Part shown: positions 17,177 to 23,450 of the stretch, one piece after another
Layout of the letters: the number at the start of each line of letters is the position of its first letter
Numbering within the stretch: position 1 is the stretch's first letter
Position numbers and translations under genes: made by a program
The notes under the pieces: generated by a model
What the model saw: the letters and a program-made list of their open reading frames with translations, nothing else
The model's database searches: none
What the model was told of the DNA's origin: nothing
Assembly: GCF_964194025.1 (NCBI RefSeq)
Contig: NC_134478.1
Location: 25,296,001-25,360,000, forward strand
DNA from: Convolutriloba macropyga
Lineage: Eukaryota
DNA: 64,000 bases
Direction: 5' to 3'

Positions 17177-17697
17177 GCTCTTTTGTGTCACCTCTAACTG
17201 TTCTCACAATATCGTCGACATATCTTAGGAACACTTTAGTTTCGGTCGAATGGTTAATGTCAGTCTGATCATTTTCACGACAGAATGCGCACATCCAGAA
17301 CTGGTTTTCCATGCTATTATATTCTGTGTTACTGATTTGCTGTCATTTTGCGTGGAACCATCTATTACAAACTCCACGCTCAACAACCCTGGAACGATAT
17401 GTTACACGGTGTTCGCAATTGCGACAAGTGCTAGATTGTGTGTTGGTTTTACATTTAGGTGTCTGTAATTTCAGTTGTGGCTCCCACGATTTCATCCAAA
17501 GATTTGCCAAAATAACCGCCAAGGACGCACCCATTGCCAACCCGTCTTTCTGACAGTACCAACTTTAATTGCATTTGAAATGAACGTTGGTTACGGTTAA
17601 TTCAAGCAGACGTTTCATTGTTGTTCTAGGTATGTTTGGTTTATCGTCCATAGCATAAAGCGATCGCAGGGCAATTTTAATGGCTTCCTTTACGGGA
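17177..17697 (-). mobile_element. Continuation of the PLE RT-PHD copy interrupted at 9031
   Basis: Resumes exactly at gctcttttgtgtcacc. This copy keeps WMCAFC and GLAMGASLAVILANLWMKSWE. Confidence 0.88.
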
Positions 17698-17704
17698 ATA
17701 TTTC

Positions 17705-17800
17705 TGATGTGTGGACGACAGAGAACACGGCTTGATTGTCAAGCTTTTATTGAATCAAACATCAGACATCTATAATACACAAGTACATTAACATAGGATT

Positions 17801-17845
<45 letters not shown>

Positions 17846-17877
17846 TTATCAAGTTATGTAGGAGTCGTATTATGACA
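17705..17877 (-). repeat. 3' LTR (173 bp, TG...CA) containing (TA)n at ~17804-17843
   Basis: Minus strand: PPT GAGTGGTGAAGAA, then TGTCATAA...AATAAA...CCACACATCA. Confidence 0.8.
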
Positions 17878-18118
17878 TTCTTCACCACTCAAGTTCTTGT
17901 CACTCTATGTTTATCTCGTAGTCTTGCAAATGCTTATGTTTGTTTCGGACTCTGTCTGATCTTCGCGGTGCCGTGGTGGTCCCTTCAGGAACAGTGGCCG
18001 CTGGCTGGTCGTCATCTCTGTTTGATCTTCCCGGCGCCGTGGCGGTCTCTTCAGGAACAGTGGCCGCTGGCTGGTCGTCATCTATGACTGGTACATCGTT
18101 ATCCTGCGATCCCCTATC

Positions 18119-21100
18119 TCAACGTCCTCCGACGCCGGCAATCTCAACGTCCTCCGACGCCGGCGAAGGTATGTTTAAGGTGTCGTCGGTTGGCCTTCGC
18201 GACAAGTCCCCGGCAAAGACGGTGTCTATTCTACCATCAGGGAAGCTCACCCTCGTCAGATTCGGTGTTATGACCTCGTCTATTTTCACAGGAATAACAG
18301 GCATCTCATCTTTGTTTCGGACGTGCTTTTTTAAGTACGCATCACTGCCGGCTCGTATCCATCACGCCTGGGCGAAGACACCTCCTCCTGCCTTCCTTGT
18401 GAAGTTGAACAGCCTATCGTGAGGAGTTTCGCGGGTAACGGTGTTGATGAGGGTTCGAAGAGCGGACAGTGCTCTAGGCAAGAGATCCTCCCAGGCAGAG
18501 CCTTTCCGGCCTTCCGAGTGGAGAAGGCACTGTACGGACTTCCAGATGACACCGTTGTATCTCTCGTTCTGCCCGTTTCCCTTGGGGTGGTACGGTGACG
18601 TTCGAGAGAGACCGATACCCCGTGAGAAGCAGAATTCTTGGAATTCCTCTGATTGGAACTGGGTGCCACGATCTGAGTGTATGAAACTCGGAGGACCAAA
18701 AATTGAAAAGAGTTGAGCAAGGCAGCCTTTCACACTGCTTGATGTAATCTTGCGGAATGGAAAGGCAAAGGGGAACCGACTATTTTCGTCGATTACAGTC
18801 AATAAGTATTGATTTCCAGACTGTGATATCTCTTTGGGCCTCACGATATCGATGGATAACTTTTCCCAGGGTCTAGTTGACTAAATGAGTTGTTGTTTTG
18901 GTGGCTGATAAAACTTGGGCTTCCAGAGGGCACAAGTTTGACAATCTGTTACTGTTTGTCGGACTTCTTGGACAGAGAAGGGAAGCTTATATCGCTGAAC
19001 GTATTCGTAGAGACGTGTGATGCCTGCGTGCGCAAGATCCCTGTGAAGTTGCTGGCAGGTTTTGTTCTCGAGTGAAGCCAATCTGGAAAGGGCGTCGGCA
19101 AAAACGTTATCGCATACCTTATGATAACTAATGTCGAAATTGTATTGTGAGAGCTCTAGTCTCCATCGGACTAACTTTTGACTTTTTATCCGTGACGTAT
19201 TGCGACTGAAGATGAATGAGAGCGCATTTTTGGTCAGTTTTTACCAGGACTCTCGAGCAGCGTAACAAATCCGAGAATCGTCGAAAGCCCTCAACAATGG
19301 CCATCGCTTCGCGTTCAACAGCTGCGTATGCAGTTTCGGCTTTGGATAGTGTACGGGAGAAGAATCCGACGGGTTTTTCTTGTTGACACAAGGTTGCACC
19401 AATCCCCGAGCCGGAGGCGTCAGTTTCAAGGACCAAGGGCTCACCTGGTACAGGAAGCCATAAAATGGCCGTTCCAACTTCTTCCTTGAGTTTTTGAATT
19501 GTAGACTTGCATTCGGAGTCCAAGGGAAAAGCCCCTTGCTTCCGTGCTTTGAGCAACGGTGAGATTTTAGTGGAGAAATCTTTTATCCACTTGCAATTGT
19601 AGGCAAAGAAGCCTTCCAGGCGTTTCAATTGGGCTTGGTTTTCTGGTACCGGGTAATCTAGGAGGGTGCGTATTCTCTCCGGGTCCGGGCGTTTTGTTCC
19701 AGCTTCCACAATGTGTCCCAACATTGCGACGGTTTTGGTACGAAAAACGCACTTCGCCTCATTGAGGGTGAGGCTCTCTCGCTTTGCCGCCGCCATGAAG
19801 TGATTTAGATTTGCGTCATGTTCCTCCACTGTGCGTCCCCCTATGATGACGTCATCGAGATAGGCCAAAGTTCGTTCTAACTTATTCCGTTTGATGAAGG
19901 ACAGCATCTCCCTTTGAAAGACGGAGACGGCATTCGTGAGGCCAAAGGGGAGCCTGGTGAATTCAAAGAGCTGGCCACATGCCTCAAAGGCGTTGAATGG
20001 GCGATCTTCTTCTTTTATCGGGACCTGGTGATAAGCTGATTTCAAGTCGATTTTGGAGAATACAGTTTTCTGGGCTGCTTTGTCCAAGAGCTCTTGCATA
20101 TCCGGAAAAGGAAACGCGTCTTTGGAGGTGTATCGGTTCACTGTTTCGGAGTAGTCTATCACCATGCGGGGCTTGTGATCTCTATTTACGAAGGCTTGGG
20201 CGCGCCACGGGGACGTGGAGACGGTGATGATCCCATCCGCGATCATCCTTTTGACTTCAGTGTCCATGAAATTGCGGTCCTCGATCTTGTGTTTCCGTGA
20301 TTTTGAAGCGATAGGCTTTGCTTTGTAAACCGAAGGCGAAAAAATTACGGGTGGGTCAATTTGCATGGTTGGGAAACCAGATTGCGTGGATGAGGCGCAT
20401 ATCAGACTTGTTTTTGGTCGGTGACCATTGAACATCAGGTTCACTTCATGGTGCCTTCGAAGCACATCCAGTCCAATAATTACGTCTGCGACCAACGACC
20501 TAGCGACTGTGAACGCTACGTTATACTCGTTTTTGTTCATGACAATTGTTGCTTGTGTCGATCCACTAGTTACCAAGGTGTCTCCATTGGCCAGAGTTGT
20601 CTCTTTCCTCTTCTTATTGATCTTGAGGGCGAGTTTTGAAGCTGCTTCCAGAGTAATGAACGATCCGGTCGAGCCAGTGTCGATCATTCCCTGCACGGAC
20701 GTTCCCGCTTCTTTGAAGAAAATTTCTGCCTGCACAGTGTTGGCCGCTCCTGTAGCACAAAAAACTGATGCGACTGTTTGGTCCCCATTACCGTCGCTTT
20801 CAGGGGAAGCATACATGACTGCAGACGAGGAGCGACATACAGACGCCCAATGACCCAACTTCGAGCACTTGTGGCAGGTGTCGCGCTTCGCTGGACATTT
20901 GGTGCGAGGATGTGACTTGAGACCGCAAAAGTTGCATTTTGCTTTGGTGGTACCGTTGAAGGGGGGCCGTTGTGTACCAGGTTTTGTAGATGACAGTGTG
21001 AAAGTTGCACAATTCGTATCCGCAACTGCAACAACTGATGCTTCAGGCGACTTGAAAGACTTTGAGAAGTCCGTTGAAAGCTCGATTGCATTTGCCAAGG

Positions 21101-21569
21101 AAACACAGCTATCAATATCGGGTTTGGAATCCTACAGCTCTAACAACCGCGCACGAATCGTGTCGGAACGAAGTCCCGCAATTAGGGCATCGCGGGCTAA
21201 ATAATCCTTGTGCTGTTGAATGTCCAGGTCGGCACATTCGCAGTTCTCGACCAGGCGTTTCCAACGTCCAAAGAACTGTGTGACAGTTTCTTCCTCCTTT
21301 TGCCTAGCACTTAAGGCTTGGTGACGCGCGAACAGGACCCTTGTTGGCTTCAGGAACTGCTTGTCTAGTGTCGCTATGGCATCGTTGTAGCCGGTATTAC
21401 TCTCAAGAAGCGCAAAGTAGTCGGCCCCTACGTAGGTTCGCAAGAAGACCAGCTTGTCAGCATCTGTGGTGGTGCCATTAATGCGCAGTCCATCTGCAAA
21501 GCAACGTTTCCACCACTTCCATTGTTCCGGGGTAGCAGTTGCCGATAGGTCAGGTGGTTTGAACTTCAT
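18119..21569 (-). pseudogene. gag-pol: Gag-Pol polyprotein (TAG stops at 21132 and ~18881, frameshift near 19210)
   Basis: Gag QWKWWKRCF..RDALIAGL; CNFCGLKSH/CHKCSKLGHW; MIDTGS; SPWRAQ, RLPFGL, AYLDD; ETDASG, EREAMAI; HRDLAH..CQTC, IDENSRF, SDRGTQF, GNGQNER. Confidence 0.92.
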
Positions 21570-21623
21570 CTCGATTTTCTTTTGGGGAACCGATGTAAGT
21601 CAAGTTATACGCAAACAGAGGAG

Positions 21624-21698
21624 CAACCGGTGATACTTAAAGAAGTATCGGGGTTGGTATTTGTGAAGCCGGTGATACTTAAACAAGTATCGGGGCTT
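21624..21698 (-). other. Twin stem-loops between the SGNH ORF and gag
   Basis: Two copies of GATACTT-n4-AAGTATC with outer stems AAGCC/GGCTT and CAACC/GGTTG. Confidence 0.75.
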
Positions 21699-21709
21699 AG
21701 AAGACTAGC

Positions 21710-22299
21710 CTAGTTTCGAGAAAGGCCACAAATGCAGCGGCGGTGTGAGCAGTAGAAGGTTCCCGTGTGGCCCTCTCGATCCACTCGCTCGCTGAACTTG
21801 GCTCTGAGGACCCGTTGTTTGAGGATGCTTCTCACCCCACTGAGTCCTCTGTGATTTAGATGGACCCGGTCCCTTCGAACGTGGAGGTTCTCGTCGTAGA
21901 TGACCTTGGAAATTCCTCGAAACAACCAACCCAGGCCTGTGCTGCTAGAATTTGGTTGGTATGTTTCGACCTCTGCGGCTGATAGTGTCCTGGTGGGATT
22001 CCAATGACAAACACTCTCGGTGCGAGCGTGCAGGCCCTGTCAGCGAGGAGGCAGAGTTCGTTGGCAATGTCCAACTCAGAGGCTGATGAGGGGTTTCGAC
22101 CGTTGAAGAGGTCGTTCCCACCAACGAACAGCACGATGGTCTCGTACTGACCTGGCTGTGGAAGGAAGTTGTAGAAGTCTTTGATTCGCGCTCCCGGGGC
22201 GGACAAGACGTTAAAATTAGGAAACCTCAACGCCTTACCTTGTGAGTCTGTGAGGAAGAGGTTTGGTGTAGGAGACTCCCTCAGGATGTGGAATCGCAT
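21710..22299 (-). pseudogene. SGNH/GDSL hydrolase (esterase) ORF with one frameshift near 21940
   Basis: Block I TDSQG, block II PGA, block III GGND, block V DRVHLN (in frame 21710-21925), C-terminal CSHRRCIC. Confidence 0.8.
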
Positions 22300-22304
22300 G
22301 TAGA

Positions 22305-22317
22305 TGATTCAATAAAA
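22305..22317 (-). promoter_or_regulatory. Putative self-priming PBS
   Basis: TTTTATTGAATCA lies 1 nt after the inferred LTR end and is the exact reverse complement of LTR TGATTCAATAAAA (17745-17757). There is no TGG-type tRNA PBS. Confidence 0.7.
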
Positions 22318-22323
22318 TTGATG

Positions 22324-22523
22324 NNNNNNNNNNNNNNNNNNNNNNNNNNNNNNNNNNNNNNNNNNNNNNNNNNNNNNNNNNNNNNNNNNNNNNNNNNNNN
22401 NNNNNNNNNNNNNNNNNNNNNNNNNNNNNNNNNNNNNNNNNNNNNNNNNNNNNNNNNNNNNNNNNNNNNNNNNNNNNNNNNNNNNNNNNNNNNNNNNNNN
22501 NNNNNNNNNNNNNNNNNNNNNNN
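22324..22523. other. Assembly gap (200 N)
   Basis: Run of N. Confidence 1.
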
Positions 22524-23450
22524 TGTGTGTGTTGGAGGCATTCTGACAATGGTTCATCCCAGTTTCTTCCTTTTTTAATGATTTTCTGGAAAATGCATCT
22601 AAATCTGATAGCAATCAGTGAAATTAGTCCAAATGGATTGATTAGAGAAGCTTCCATTGATAGCACCTCCAATTGAGTTAGTTGTTGTCCTGTGTAGAGA
22701 AATTTTGGTTTTGCGAACATCAGCTTGTCCATCTTTGGATTCCACGTCTGACCTAGGATTTTTTGGGTTTTCATTTCGGCCTTGACCTCTTCCAGTGGGT
22801 TTTCCAAAGAGGTTGGTTTGTAGCTTGGGAACCTTGTCAAATTGAATCCACCTGTCAGCAAAACAGCTTCAATCTCATGTGCACTTCTGCGTGCCTCCTC
22901 CTCAGAGGGGTAGGTCTGTATGTAGAACAGCTGCACGATTGATTTGTACGCCTCTGGATGCTCTTGTTTGTGGTAATTTGCACGCTTCCGCAGATCAAAG
23001 ATCGCACAGGAAGGTGAACATGCGGCTCCAAAAACAAGTCGATTGTATTTGAAGACCTTTTCTTTGCCATCTTCTGTCCAGAGAAAACGTAGAATGTCCT
23101 GGTCTTGCAGTTGTATGCCACTCTGCATGAATTTTGCTTCGATGTCCCCTGTGACTGCTAGTGAGTACTGTCTAAAGCAGAGAAGAAGGTCATGCAGGTT
23201 GCAAAGTAGATTAGTAGATTAGGTCCTGACAGCAATGCATCAGTGATTGAGATTCCCTGATATTTTGCAGCAGCGTTTTTGACTCTGCGGATTTTGTCCT
23301 GCTTCTGTTTTTTTGGTCACTGTGTAATGGGGAAATTACCAAACGGAGTGTCTGCAAGAGGCAGTTTTTATCAGTCTGCAATTGTGATGCAGTTTTTATC
23401 CAAATCCTTTTTGATTGTTTCCTCGTAGCGATCTCTCAAGTTGTTGTCCC
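22524..23450 (-). mobile_element. BEL/Pao pol relic (RT and RNase H region)
   Basis: GDIEAKFMQ..DQDILRFLW..RLVFGAACSP; GGFNL; KILGQTWNP; ASLINPFGLI; WDEPL. Confidence 0.85.

What the first reader, a model, noticed from the sequence alone, without database searches (positions are those of the whole stretch)
21710..22299. SGNH esterase as the first cistron of an LTR retrotransposon
Seen: an ORF with all four SGNH blocks (DS, G, GxND, DxxH) starts 6 nt after the PBS-position sequence and lies upstream of gag on the same strand, so it appears to be inside the element. Established: SGNH esterases occur in ORF1 of some non-LTR elements (CR1/L2/RTEX) and bind lipids. Inference: the element may use a lipid-binding or deacylating accessory protein for membrane targeting or particle assembly. 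Together with self-priming and the twin hairpins this is an unusual element design.
Basis: partly seen in the sequence, partly recalled or inferred. Interest (0 to 1): 0.76.

Follow-up and report, generated by a model that had tools for sequence, protein, structure and literature searches.

The report
Esterase-first gypsy retrotransposon
A small esterase gene of the kind normally carried by LINE elements sits as the first gene, ahead of gag, in a Ty3/gypsy retrotransposon, and it contains no internal start codons, so ribosomes can probably scan through it to reach gag.

Summary
On the minus strand, 22299->21710 is a 196-codon SGNH/GDSL-type esterase ORF. In this copy it is broken by a one-base deletion near 21932.

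- **It lies inside the element.** Eight other copies (92-99% identical) show a 184-bp LTR ending 19 nt before the ATG. They have 5-bp target duplications, a polypurine tract, and gag-PR-RT-RH-INT downstream. The window's 5' LTR lies in the N gap.
- **It is an esterase.** The ORF is intact in five other copies. Ser/Gly/Asn/Asp-His blocks are conserved, and the model (pLDDT 88.6) matches SGNH esterases at Z 16.
- **It belongs to a shared family.** Relatives at 39-47% identity are the first ORF of CR1-like LINEs and BEL/Pao elements here. A sister gypsy from another sample keeps the same layout.
- **New here: start-codon avoidance.** The 727 nt from the esterase AUG to the gag AUG hold no ATG, against 11 CAT. 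LINE and BEL/Pao versions show the same. The first AUG context is weak and the next one strong, which is a leaky-scanning design.

The lipid or membrane role remains an untested analogy. GDSL ORFs are already known in bdelloid LTR elements (PMC5408684). This scan had already noted the BEL/Pao version in this genome. I rate it a new variant of a known kind.

The parts
17705..17877 (-). 3' LTR (173 bp here, about 184 bp in other copies). It starts TGTCAT and ends CACATCA. It holds a (TA)n run and an AATAAA signal.
   Evidence: Matches both LTRs of L015 (3822-4005 and 8426-8607) at 94-97%.
17878..17890 (-). Polypurine tract directly upstream of the 3' LTR.
   Evidence: Purine-rich 13-mer conserved in all copies and in the sister element L020.
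17900..21569 (-). gag-pol, broken into several ORFs in this copy. It comprises gag (21132-21569), two CCHC knuckles, PR, RT and RNase H (19128-21098), and integrase (about 18100-19081). The pol stop is at 17900-17902.
   Evidence: Pfam hits: Retrotrans_gag (weak), gag-asp_proteas, RVT_1 2e-26, RT_RNaseH_2 1.5e-22, rve 1e-16. The frame end comes from L010/L017.
21570..21709 (-). 140-nt spacer between the esterase stop and the gag AUG. It is ATG-free and holds two near-identical hairpins, repeated units at about 21669-21695 and 21627-21653.
   Evidence: RNA fold shows two 7-bp stems with 4-nt loops; overall z-score is only -1.7.
21710..22299 (-). SGNH/GDSL-type esterase ORF, 196 codons in intact copies. 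It is the first cistron of the element. Here it is split by a one-base deletion near 21932. It has no ATG in any frame after its start codon.
22300..22318 (-). 19-nt leader at the primer-binding-site position. It has no tRNA-type TGG start. Its first 14 nt are complementary to a 13-nt LTR segment that includes AATAAA.
   Evidence: The pairing is kept by a G/C to C/G swap in the sister element L020.
22319..22323 (-). Last 5 nt of the 5' LTR. The rest of the LTR is not readable in the window.
   Evidence: Alignment with the 5' LTR ends of L012, L013, L015, L016 and L017.
22324..22523 (.). 200-N gap where the body of the 5' LTR should be. I did not fill it.
   Evidence: Copy L010 has a 200-N run at the same place.

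Best explanation
**The element.** This is a roughly 4.8-kb Ty3/gypsy LTR retrotransposon. Its layout is LTR, a 19-nt primer site, an esterase ORF, a 140-nt spacer, gag-PR-RT-RH-INT, a polypurine tract, and the second LTR. The first cistron is an element-owned accessory gene.

**The protein.** It is a 196-aa basic protein (pI 10.3) with an SGNH-fold serine esterase domain. The Ser19/Asp144/His147 triad and the Gly36/Asn62 oxyanion residues are complete. A short C-terminal His/Cys cluster follows the domain.

**Its origin.** The gene belongs to a family of stand-alone esterase ORFs of about 195-210 aa. In the same genome these ORFs head CR1-like LINEs and BEL/Pao elements. The gypsy lineage therefore most likely acquired a ready-made 5' cassette from another retroelement. 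LINEs are the likeliest donor because they hold most of the diversity. Donor direction is an inference.

**How it is expressed.** Esterase and gag-pol are most likely translated from the same full-length RNA by leaky scanning. Three features point to this:
- The esterase AUG has a pyrimidine at -3.
- The following roughly 730 nt contain no AUG in any frame.
- The gag AUG has a purine at -3.
The sequence signature is shown. The mechanism is inferred.

**What the protein does.** This is the weakest step. By analogy with the ZfL2-1 LINE esterase, it may bind or deacylate membrane lipids and so help place the RNP or particle at membranes.

**My sub-confidences.**
- Genuine, selected element gene: about 0.85.
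- Same cassette family as the LINE and BEL/Pao esterases: about 0.9.
- Leaky scanning: about 0.6.
- Lipid or membrane role: about 0.35.
For: **Element structure.**
- There are nine copies at 92-99% identity.
- Homology between copies starts and ends at the LTR edges.
- LTR pairs are 96.5-98.7% identical in four copies; older L017 is 81%.
- Target duplications are perfect in two copies (CGGAG in L015, ATACT in L016) and 4/5 in two more.
- The PPT and domain order were confirmed.

**Esterase.**
- Ser19, GGND60-63 and His147 are invariant; Gly36 and Asp144 are conserved in at least 90% of 18 sequences.
- The model has pLDDT 88.6 and pTM 0.87.
- Foldseek and VIA top hits are all SGNH enzymes: sialate O-acetylesterase Z 16.2 and PAF-AH Ib alpha Z 15.6.

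**Selection.**
- Sister gypsy L020 has gag-pol 65.7% and esterase 51.3% identical.
- Synonymous sites between the two are saturated; dN is 0.49 against 0.28 for gag-pol.
- L020 keeps an intact 194-aa ORF in the same place.
- Four more diverged gypsy-gag loci have an esterase hit 80-330 bp upstream.

**Shared cassette.**
- L019, L032 and L047 show esterase followed by a PHD ORF and/or APE/RT.
- L048, L050 and L052 show esterase followed by a DUF1759 gag.
- L018 and L053 are BEL/Pao elements carrying it.

**Leaky scanning.**
- The window has 0 ATG against 11 CAT in 727 nt.
- L015 has 0 ATG, with 9 in the next 728 nt.
- Four LINE families and BEL L018 also have 0; shuffles give 9-13.
- The first AUG has a pyrimidine at -3 in 8 of 9 families. 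The downstream AUG has a purine at -3 in 9 of 9.
- The precedent is RTBV ORFs I-II, which lack internal AUGs (PMC5902531).

**Function analogy.** PMC3905857 reports an active esterase with a basic surface that binds acidic liposomes.
Against: - Pfam scores are below the gathering cut-off.
- A profile of the family does not find the solved LINE esterase 4c1b at E <= 10. 4c1b is also not among the top 50 structural hits.
- There is no coiled-coil domain like the one in ZfL2-1 ORF1p.
- No RNA run exists for this organism, so transcription, the 5' end and splicing are unknown. A spliced gag mRNA or reinitiation is not excluded.
- Differences among the nine copies look neutral, at 3-4 synonymous against 6-11 non-synonymous per pair. 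Selection is seen only between lineages.
- Every copy examined has a broken gag-pol, so the family may be extinct.
- The esterase tree is unresolved at depth, and the gypsy clade has only 82/85 support. Donor and number of captures are open.
- The nearest gag relatives (52% identity) have no esterase hit nearby among the 150 scored candidates. The trait may therefore be patchy.
Confidence: 0.6

Rival explanations
1. The esterase is a real element gene but does not act on membrane lipids. It could be an O-acetyl or other small-ester hydrolase that removes a modification from a host glycan, protein or nucleic-acid-associated molecule. Such a role could resemble a receptor-destroying or counter-defence activity. 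Alternatively it could bind RNA through its basic surface and C-terminal His/Cys cluster.
For: The best structural matches are sialate O-acetylesterases (Z 16.2) and the PAF acetylhydrolase Ib alpha subunit (Z 15.6), which are short-acyl esterases. A conserved H-x5-C-x4-C-x-C tail is present, and the protein has pI 10.3. There is no sequence link to the lipid-binding ZfL2-1 esterase.
Against: Fold similarity does not give substrate. There is no signal peptide or transmembrane segment for an extracellular glycan role, judging from the N-terminal sequence, which forms a beta-strand of the core fold. The only experimentally studied retroelement esterase binds acidic lipids (PMC3905857).
Confidence: 0.22
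2. The ORF is a neutral passenger. It would be a 5' fragment of a LINE picked up once by template switching or nested insertion, carried along without benefit to the gypsy element.
For: The differences among the nine copies are compatible with neutral decay. The closest gag relatives at 52% identity show no nearby esterase hit. All gag-pol frames seen are broken.
Against: The same layout persists in sister element L020 after saturation of synonymous sites. There the ORF is open at the same length, the catalytic residues are kept, and the ATG-free property is kept, with one ATG in 699 nt against 11 CAT. Four further diverged gypsy loci show the same adjacency. A passenger would not keep strand-specific ATG avoidance.
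Confidence: 0.07
3. gag is not reached by leaky scanning. Instead it is reached by splicing out the esterase ORF, by reinitiation after the esterase stop, or by an internal entry site built on the twin hairpins. On this view the ATG depletion has another cause.
For: There are no RNA data. LINE bicistronic RNAs are known to use termination-reinitiation (PMC3894237 reviews these routes). A structured spacer lies just before gag.
Against: Neither reinitiation nor an IRES requires removal of every ATG in all three frames over about 730 nt. The depletion is strand-specific (0 ATG against 11 CAT) and recurs in three element classes with different spacers. The hairpin region folds only marginally better than shuffles (z = -1.7).
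Confidence: 0.3
4. The linkage is an artefact. Either it is an assembly chimera at the N gap, or a host esterase gene merely lies next to an LTR element.
For: The window's 5' LTR is hidden by a 200-N gap, and a BEL/Pao pol fragment lies beyond it.
Against: Several ungapped copies on different contigs show LTR-esterase-gag-pol-LTR flanked by target duplications. A further copy sits in an independent assembly, L054.
Confidence: 0.02

Closest known systems
Esterase domain of ORF1p in CR1/L2/RTEX non-LTR retrotransposons (Kapitonov & Jurka 2003; ZfL2-1 ORF1p, PDB 4c1b, PMC3905857)
   Same: It is an SGNH-type esterase encoded as the 5' cistron of a retroelement, with a basic protein. Relatives of the window's ORF at 41-47% identity do head CR1-like LINEs that have a PHD ORF and APE/RT.
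   Different: Here it is a stand-alone ORF of about 196 aa with no coiled coil, and it is carried by an LTR element upstream of gag. No sequence match to 4c1b was detectable with a family profile. It has a C-terminal His/Cys cluster.
GDSL esterase ORF3 of bdelloid rotifer Vesta LTR retrotransposons (Rodriguez, Kenefick & Arkhipova 2017, PMC5408684)
   Same: An LTR retrotransposon carries an extra GDSL/SGNH ORF with intact catalytic residues. The same ORF type is shared with other retroelement classes.
   Different: In Vesta the ORF lies downstream of pol, in the env position, and does not cluster with LINE esterases. Here it lies upstream of gag and belongs to the same family as LINE esterases of the host genome.
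Leaky-scanning polycistronic RNA of rice tungro bacilliform virus and badnaviruses (Futterer et al. 1997, as reviewed in PMC5902531)
   Same: Long upstream ORFs are devoid of internal AUGs. The first start codon is weak, so scanning ribosomes reach the next ORF of a reverse-transcribing element.
   Different: Those are plant pararetroviruses with unrelated upstream ORFs. Here the evidence is the sequence signature only, in animal retrotransposons of three classes.
BEL/Pao elements with an SGNH ORF ahead of gag in this same genome (scan notes s1-208229, s1-244514) and in another assembly (L018, L053)
   Same: The esterase family is the same (39-45% identity). The ORF occupies the same 5' position and shows the same ATG-poor design.
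   Different: They belong to a different LTR superfamily. In L053 the whole esterase ORF lies inside the 1.23-kb LTR, upstream of a tRNA-type PBS. In the gypsy it lies after the primer site and is not part of the LTR.
Ogre-type plant Ty3/gypsy elements with an extra ORF upstream of gag (from my own knowledge, not checked here)
   Same: An additional ORF sits between the 5' LTR and gag in a Ty3/gypsy element.
   Different: The Ogre ORF1 has no assigned enzymatic fold. It occurs in a plant lineage and has no link to LINEs.

Membership tests
SGNH/GDSL hydrolase superfamily | Block I serine nucleophile at the end of the first core strand | tested here: met
   Ser19 in T/A-D-S-Q is invariant in 18 family members. 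It follows strand 13-17 in the model.
SGNH/GDSL hydrolase superfamily | Block II Gly and block III GxND Asn (oxyanion hole) | tested here: met
   Gly36 is conserved in at least 90% of members. G60-G61-N62-D63 are invariant. Block III aligns with GGND of solved GDSL lipases.
SGNH/GDSL hydrolase superfamily | Block V DxxH (acid and base of the triad) | tested here: met
   Asp144 is conserved in at least 90% of members and His147 is invariant. It aligns with D-x-x-H of AlinE4 and EstL5.
SGNH/GDSL hydrolase superfamily | Score above the curated Pfam cut-off (PF13472) | tested here: not met
   Scores are 22-24 bits against a cut-off of 32.9. Some database relatives carry precomputed PF13472/PF00657 hits.
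SGNH/GDSL hydrolase superfamily | Three-layer alpha/beta/alpha SGNH fold | tested here: met
   The model has pLDDT 88.6. VIA gives Z 16.2, rmsd 2.2 A over 155 aa to 7pzg, and all 50 top hits are SGNH enzymes.
SGNH/GDSL hydrolase superfamily | Hydrolytic activity | not testable with these tools
   Needs recombinant protein.
LINE (CR1/L2/RTEX) ORF1 esterase | Encoded as the first ORF or domain of an APE/RT non-LTR element | tested here: not met
   The window's ORF sits in an LTR element. Its relatives (41-47% identity) do meet the feature: L019, L032, L043 and L047. It shares the protein family but not the host element.
LINE (CR1/L2/RTEX) ORF1 esterase | N-terminal coiled-coil dimerisation domain as in ZfL2-1 ORF1p | tested here: not met
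   The SGNH core starts at residue 1-4 of the 196-aa ORF and the structural alignments cover residues 1-168, which leaves no room for a coiled coil.
LINE (CR1/L2/RTEX) ORF1 esterase | Detectable sequence or structure similarity to the solved ZfL2-1 esterase (4c1b) | tested here: inconclusive
   The family profile did not find it at E <= 10. It is not in the top 50 of Foldseek or VIA. 4c1b is a domain-swapped crystal form (PMC3905857), which may hinder matching.
LINE (CR1/L2/RTEX) ORF1 esterase | Binding of acidic phospholipids or liposomes | not testable with these tools
   Only the basic pI of 10.3 is known.
Ty3/gypsy LTR retrotransposon | Two LTRs flanked by a short target-site duplication, with a PPT before the 3' LTR | tested here: met
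   LTRs are 184 bp. The 5-bp duplications are perfect in L015 and L016 and 4/5 in L017 and the C3 copy. The PPT is conserved.
Ty3/gypsy LTR retrotransposon | gag with CCHC knuckles and the pol order PR-RT-RNase H-INT | tested here: met
   Pfam hits are in that order along 21569->18100. Two CX2CX4HX4C knuckles are present.
Ty3/gypsy LTR retrotransposon | tRNA-complementary primer binding site after the 5' LTR | tested here: inconclusive
   The 19-nt leader has no TGG start. Instead 13 nt pair with an LTR segment, and the pairing is kept by a compensatory change in L020. I did not compare it with the host's tRNAs.
Bdelloid Vesta-type GDSL-bearing LTR element | GDSL ORF placed after pol (ORF3) and unrelated to LINE esterases | tested here: not met
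   Here the ORF is before gag and is 41-47% identical to LINE-borne esterases. The definition comes from PMC5408684.
Leaky-scanning polycistronic RNA (RTBV type) | Upstream cistron and spacer free of AUG in all frames | tested here: met
   0 ATG in 727 nt in the window against 11 CAT. The pattern recurs in L015, L010, L016, L019, L032, L033, L038 and L018.
Leaky-scanning polycistronic RNA (RTBV type) | Weak context at the first AUG and a better context at the next | tested here: met
   There is a pyrimidine at -3 and no G at +4 at the esterase AUG in 8 of 9 families. There is a purine at -3 at the downstream AUG in 9 of 9.
Leaky-scanning polycistronic RNA (RTBV type) | Both proteins made from one capped RNA | not testable with these tools
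   No RNA runs are available for this organism.

The most novel reading that the evidence does not exclude
In this animal lineage a single portable 'esterase-first' cassette has spread among all major retroelement classes: CR1-like LINEs, BEL/Pao and Ty3/gypsy. In one BEL/Pao family it has even become part of the LTR itself. The cassette is a Met-free, AUG-free SGNH esterase ORF with a weak start codon, so it can be bolted in front of any retroelement's first gene without blocking that gene's translation. This would mean that retroelements here share a class-independent need for the enzyme, for example for membrane-associated assembly or germline or cell-to-cell entry. It would also mean that translational transparency is what makes the module exchangeable.
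Probability: 0.3. Interest if true: 0.78.

Novelty: new variant of a known kind. Interest (0 to 1): 0.62.

Why it matters
Accessory enzymes of retrotransposons are rare windows on what these elements need from the cell. Esterases were known in LINE ORF1 proteins, and as a 3' ORF in bdelloid LTR elements. Their role is still unproven.

This work adds three points:
- The LINE-type esterase also leads Ty3/gypsy and BEL/Pao elements, so it is exchanged between classes with different replication modes. That argues for a general function rather than a LINE-specific one.
- The cassette has a clear, testable expression design, an AUG-free first cistron, which explains how it can sit before gag without silencing it.
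- Naturally intact copies provide material for direct enzymology and lipid-binding tests.

If the function is membrane targeting, it would link LINE RNP biology and Gag-type assembly.

Tried and rejected
- **RNA evidence.** The look-up of sequencing runs found only four runs of unrecorded type from one study and no RNA run. I therefore did not use read laying, and expression, the 5' end and splicing stay open.
- **More genomic context.** I could not read the contexts of the 52%-identity gag family or the four extra esterase-gag loci. Those rest on coordinates only.
- **Link to the solved LINE esterase.** A sequence search with one protein and with a family profile did not find 4c1b.
- **dN/dS between lineages.** Synonymous sites are saturated, so no ratio could be computed and only dN is given.
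- **dN/dS within the family.** The counts look neutral and say nothing about function.
- **Esterase tree.** It was meant to find the donor, but deep nodes are unresolved. Only the gypsy pair groups, at 82/85.
- **Twin hairpins as a strong structure.** The region folds only marginally better than shuffles (z = -1.7).
- **Assembly chimera and a neighbouring host gene.** Both were considered and rejected on the evidence of the other copies.
- **Complex prediction.** I did not use it because I make no binding claim.
- **The N gap.** I did not read, fill or look it up.

Full report
**1. What is in the window**

Read on the minus strand, 22299->21710 encodes a protein that starts MRFHILRESP. It carries TDSQ (Ser19), SAPG (Gly36), GGND (Asn62) and DRVH (Asp144/His147). 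In the window the frame is split into 147-aa and 71-aa pieces by a one-base deletion near 21932 relative to the other copies.

Downstream on the same strand lie:
- a 140-nt spacer with two near-identical hairpins;
- gag (21569-21132);
- an ORF with two CCHC knuckles, aspartic protease, RT (YLDD) and RNase H (21098-19128);
- an integrase (about 19081-18100), all by Pfam;
- a polypurine tract (17890-17878);
- a 173-bp LTR (17877-17705).

Upstream of the ORF there are 19 nt and then five bases. After that comes a 200-N gap (22324-22523), which I did not try to fill. Beyond the gap is a BEL/Pao pol fragment that belongs to another element.

**2. Is the ORF inside the element?**

Yes. The genome is 1.18 Gb, and the window is C11:25296001-25360000. 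It holds eight more copies of the 755-bp esterase region at 92-99% identity.

- In ungapped copies, homology starts at a 184-bp LTR (TGTCAT...CACATCA) and ends at a second LTR about 4.6 kb downstream.
- Five-base target duplications flank the element. They are perfect in L015 (CGGAG) and L016 (ATACT) and 4/5 in L017 and the C3 copy.
- An independent assembly holds a further copy with LTRs (L054).
- All nine copies carry the ORF. It is open over 196 codons in five of them.
- No examined copy has an unbroken gag-pol.

Differences among copies look neutral, at 3-4 synonymous against 6-11 non-synonymous per pair. That is expected for copies decaying after insertion.

**3. Is it an esterase?**

Pfam alone is weak. 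PF13472 scores 22-24 bits against a cut-off of 32.9.

- A word search found ten relatives.
- The genome itself has over 1000 candidate loci.
- In an 18-sequence alignment (A2), Ser19, Gln20, G60-G61-N62-D63 and His147 are invariant. Gly36 and Asp144 are conserved in at least 90%.
- The AlphaFold model built on A2 has pLDDT 88.6 and pTM 0.87.
- All top Foldseek hits are SGNH hydrolases.
- VIA gives Z 16.2, rmsd 2.2 A over 155 residues to a sialate O-acetylesterase, and Z 15.6 to PAF acetylhydrolase Ib alpha.

The SGNH core fills residues 1-170. A conserved H-x5-C-x4-C-x-C tail follows. The protein is basic, with pI 10.3. It has no coiled coil.

A profile of the family does not find the solved LINE esterase 4c1b. 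The tie to LINE esterases therefore rests on genomic context, not on similarity to that structure.

**4. Relatives and their hosts**

I classified the ORF that follows each relative by tblastn and Pfam.

- **LINE.** The nearest relatives outside the family (44-47% identity; L032-L034, L043) and many others (L035-L047, L049, L051) are followed by a PHD-like ORF and/or an APE endonuclease. In L019, from another assembly, the order is esterase, PHD ORF, APE/RT. That is the CR1-like design of Kapitonov and Jurka 2003.
- **BEL/Pao.** L048, L050 and L052 (39% identity) are followed by a DUF1759 gag. L018 and L053, from another assembly, are full BEL/Pao elements.
- **Gypsy.** L020, a contig from another sample, reads integrase end, a roughly 150-nt LTR, esterase (51% identical), then gag-pol (66% identical). 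It is a sister gypsy with the same layout.

Matching the places shows four more diverged gypsy-gag loci with an esterase hit 80-330 bp upstream. They are at C1:56251416, C2:85283643, C7:923472 and C12:42052951. The gag family at 52% identity has no such hit among the 150 scored candidates, which is not conclusive.

In a tree of the esterases, the two gypsy lineages group at 82/85 support. Deeper nodes are open. The direction of transfer is therefore inferred only from the much greater LINE diversity.

Between the two gypsy lineages synonymous sites are saturated. dN is 0.49 for the esterase and 0.28 for gag-pol. An open ORF of equal length with the catalytic residues kept across that distance argues for purifying selection.

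**5. How it is expressed: a new observation**

- In the window there is no ATG in any frame in the 727 nt between the esterase AUG and the gag AUG. The same stretch has 11 CAT.
- In L015 the count is 0, against 9 ATG in the next 728 nt and a shuffled mean of 9.4.
- The same holds for LINE L019, L032, L033, L038 and L043 and for BEL L018 (0 ATG in 641-766 nt against 9-16 CAT). L020, L047 and L048 have 1-4.
- The proteins have no internal Met in 13 of 18 sequences.
- The esterase AUG has a pyrimidine at -3 and no G at +4 in 8 of 9 families. The next AUG has a purine at -3 in all 9.
- From the last ATG of the LTR to the esterase AUG there are 74 ATG-free nucleotides.

This is the signature of leaky scanning through a long AUG-free cistron. 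The same mechanism has been shown experimentally for ORFs I and II of rice tungro bacilliform virus (PMC5902531). It would explain how a 196-codon ORF can sit ahead of gag, or ahead of a LINE's ORF, without blocking it. It would also explain why the cassette is portable.

The mechanism is inferred. No RNA run exists for this organism, so splicing or reinitiation is not excluded.

**6. What it does**

This is the weakest step. The only studied retroelement esterase, ZfL2-1 ORF1p, is a slow esterase with a basic face. It binds acidic phospholipids and liposomes, and its authors proposed a Gag-MA-like membrane role (PMC3905857). The gypsy protein shares the fold, the triad and the basic charge, but not the coiled coil. 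I give a lipid or membrane role about 0.35. I give a different ester substrate, or an RNA-binding role through the His/Cys tail, about 0.2.

**7. Comparison with what is known**

Three things were already known:
- esterase domains in CR1/L2/RTEX ORF1;
- GDSL ORF3 in bdelloid Vesta LTR elements, placed after pol and not related to LINE esterases (PMC5408684);
- sharing of accessory ORFs between retroelement classes (same paper).

Four literature searches found no report of a LINE-type esterase as the first cistron of a Ty3/gypsy element, or of AUG-free esterase cistrons.

Earlier notes of this scan had already recorded the BEL/Pao version in this genome and its sharing with LINE and gypsy-like elements. 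I found the same contexts independently before reading them. One note calls the genome an acoel worm and reports a host CCDC174-esterase fusion. I did not test either claim.

**8. Verdict**

- The architectural reading is supported.
- The functional reading is open.
- It is a new variant of a known kind.

The added points are the cassette's presence in three element classes, its conservation in a sister gypsy lineage, and the start-codon-free design. A retrotransposition test would need a restored element and is referred.

Noticed in passing
window 22300-22318 and 3' LTR 17741-17753; L020:1745-1802: The 19-nt leader after the LTR pairs over 13 nt with an LTR segment that includes the AATAAA signal. 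In the sister element L020 both partners differ at one position in a compensatory way (G/C swapped), so the pairing is conserved. This fits Tf1-like self-priming, as in the other first-stage note, or a hairpin that masks the 5' poly(A) signal. The last ATG of the LTR lies just upstream of this segment.
   Followed up: partly
L053:9378-10607 and 17251-18516; L018:7373-8660: In a BEL/Pao family of another assembly the whole esterase ORF lies inside the 1.23-kb LTR, with both LTRs 98% identical and a TSD of ATCAA. A tRNA-type primer site (beginning TGGTGCC) follows the LTR. The esterase there is LTR-encoded, unlike in the gypsy.
   Followed up: partly
residues 178-191 of the esterase (window about 21727-21768, minus strand): A conserved C-terminal H-x5-C-x4-C-x-C cluster follows the SGNH domain in gypsy, BEL/Pao and LINE versions. 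It may be a zinc knuckle. Model confidence there is low.
   Followed up: no
window 21627-21695, minus strand: Two near-identical 27-nt units each form a 7-bp hairpin with a 4-nt loop in the esterase-gag spacer. L020 has one longer hairpin at the same place. The function is unknown.
   Followed up: partly
window 22324-22523 and L010:3796-3995: Two copies of the family have a 200-N run exactly where the 5' LTR should be. The LTR holds a long (TA)n run. I did not read or fill these runs.
   Followed up: no
window 22524-23128, minus strand: A BEL/Pao pol fragment (RT to Peptidase_A17 start) lies just beyond the gap. It belongs to a different element from the gypsy.
   Followed up: partly
G000:C5:57129533-57131316 (L045, L047): Two esterase ORFs lie in tandem about 1.2 kb apart at the head of one LINE-like locus, followed by a 179-aa ORF and APE.
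   Followed up: no
G000:C16:22651122-22661465: A tandem array of at least nine gag-like open frames of 262 aa, 48-49% identical to this element's gag, repeats at a period of about 1.2 kb. This rests on coordinates only.
   Followed up: no
L048:284-1413 (G000:C1, upstream of a BEL/Pao esterase): An array of roughly 128-bp tandem repeats lies directly upstream of the esterase ORF of the genome's own BEL/Pao family.
   Followed up: no
G000, whole genome: The first look found more than 1000 candidate loci for this esterase family. It is one of the commonest small ORFs in the genome.
   Followed up: partly
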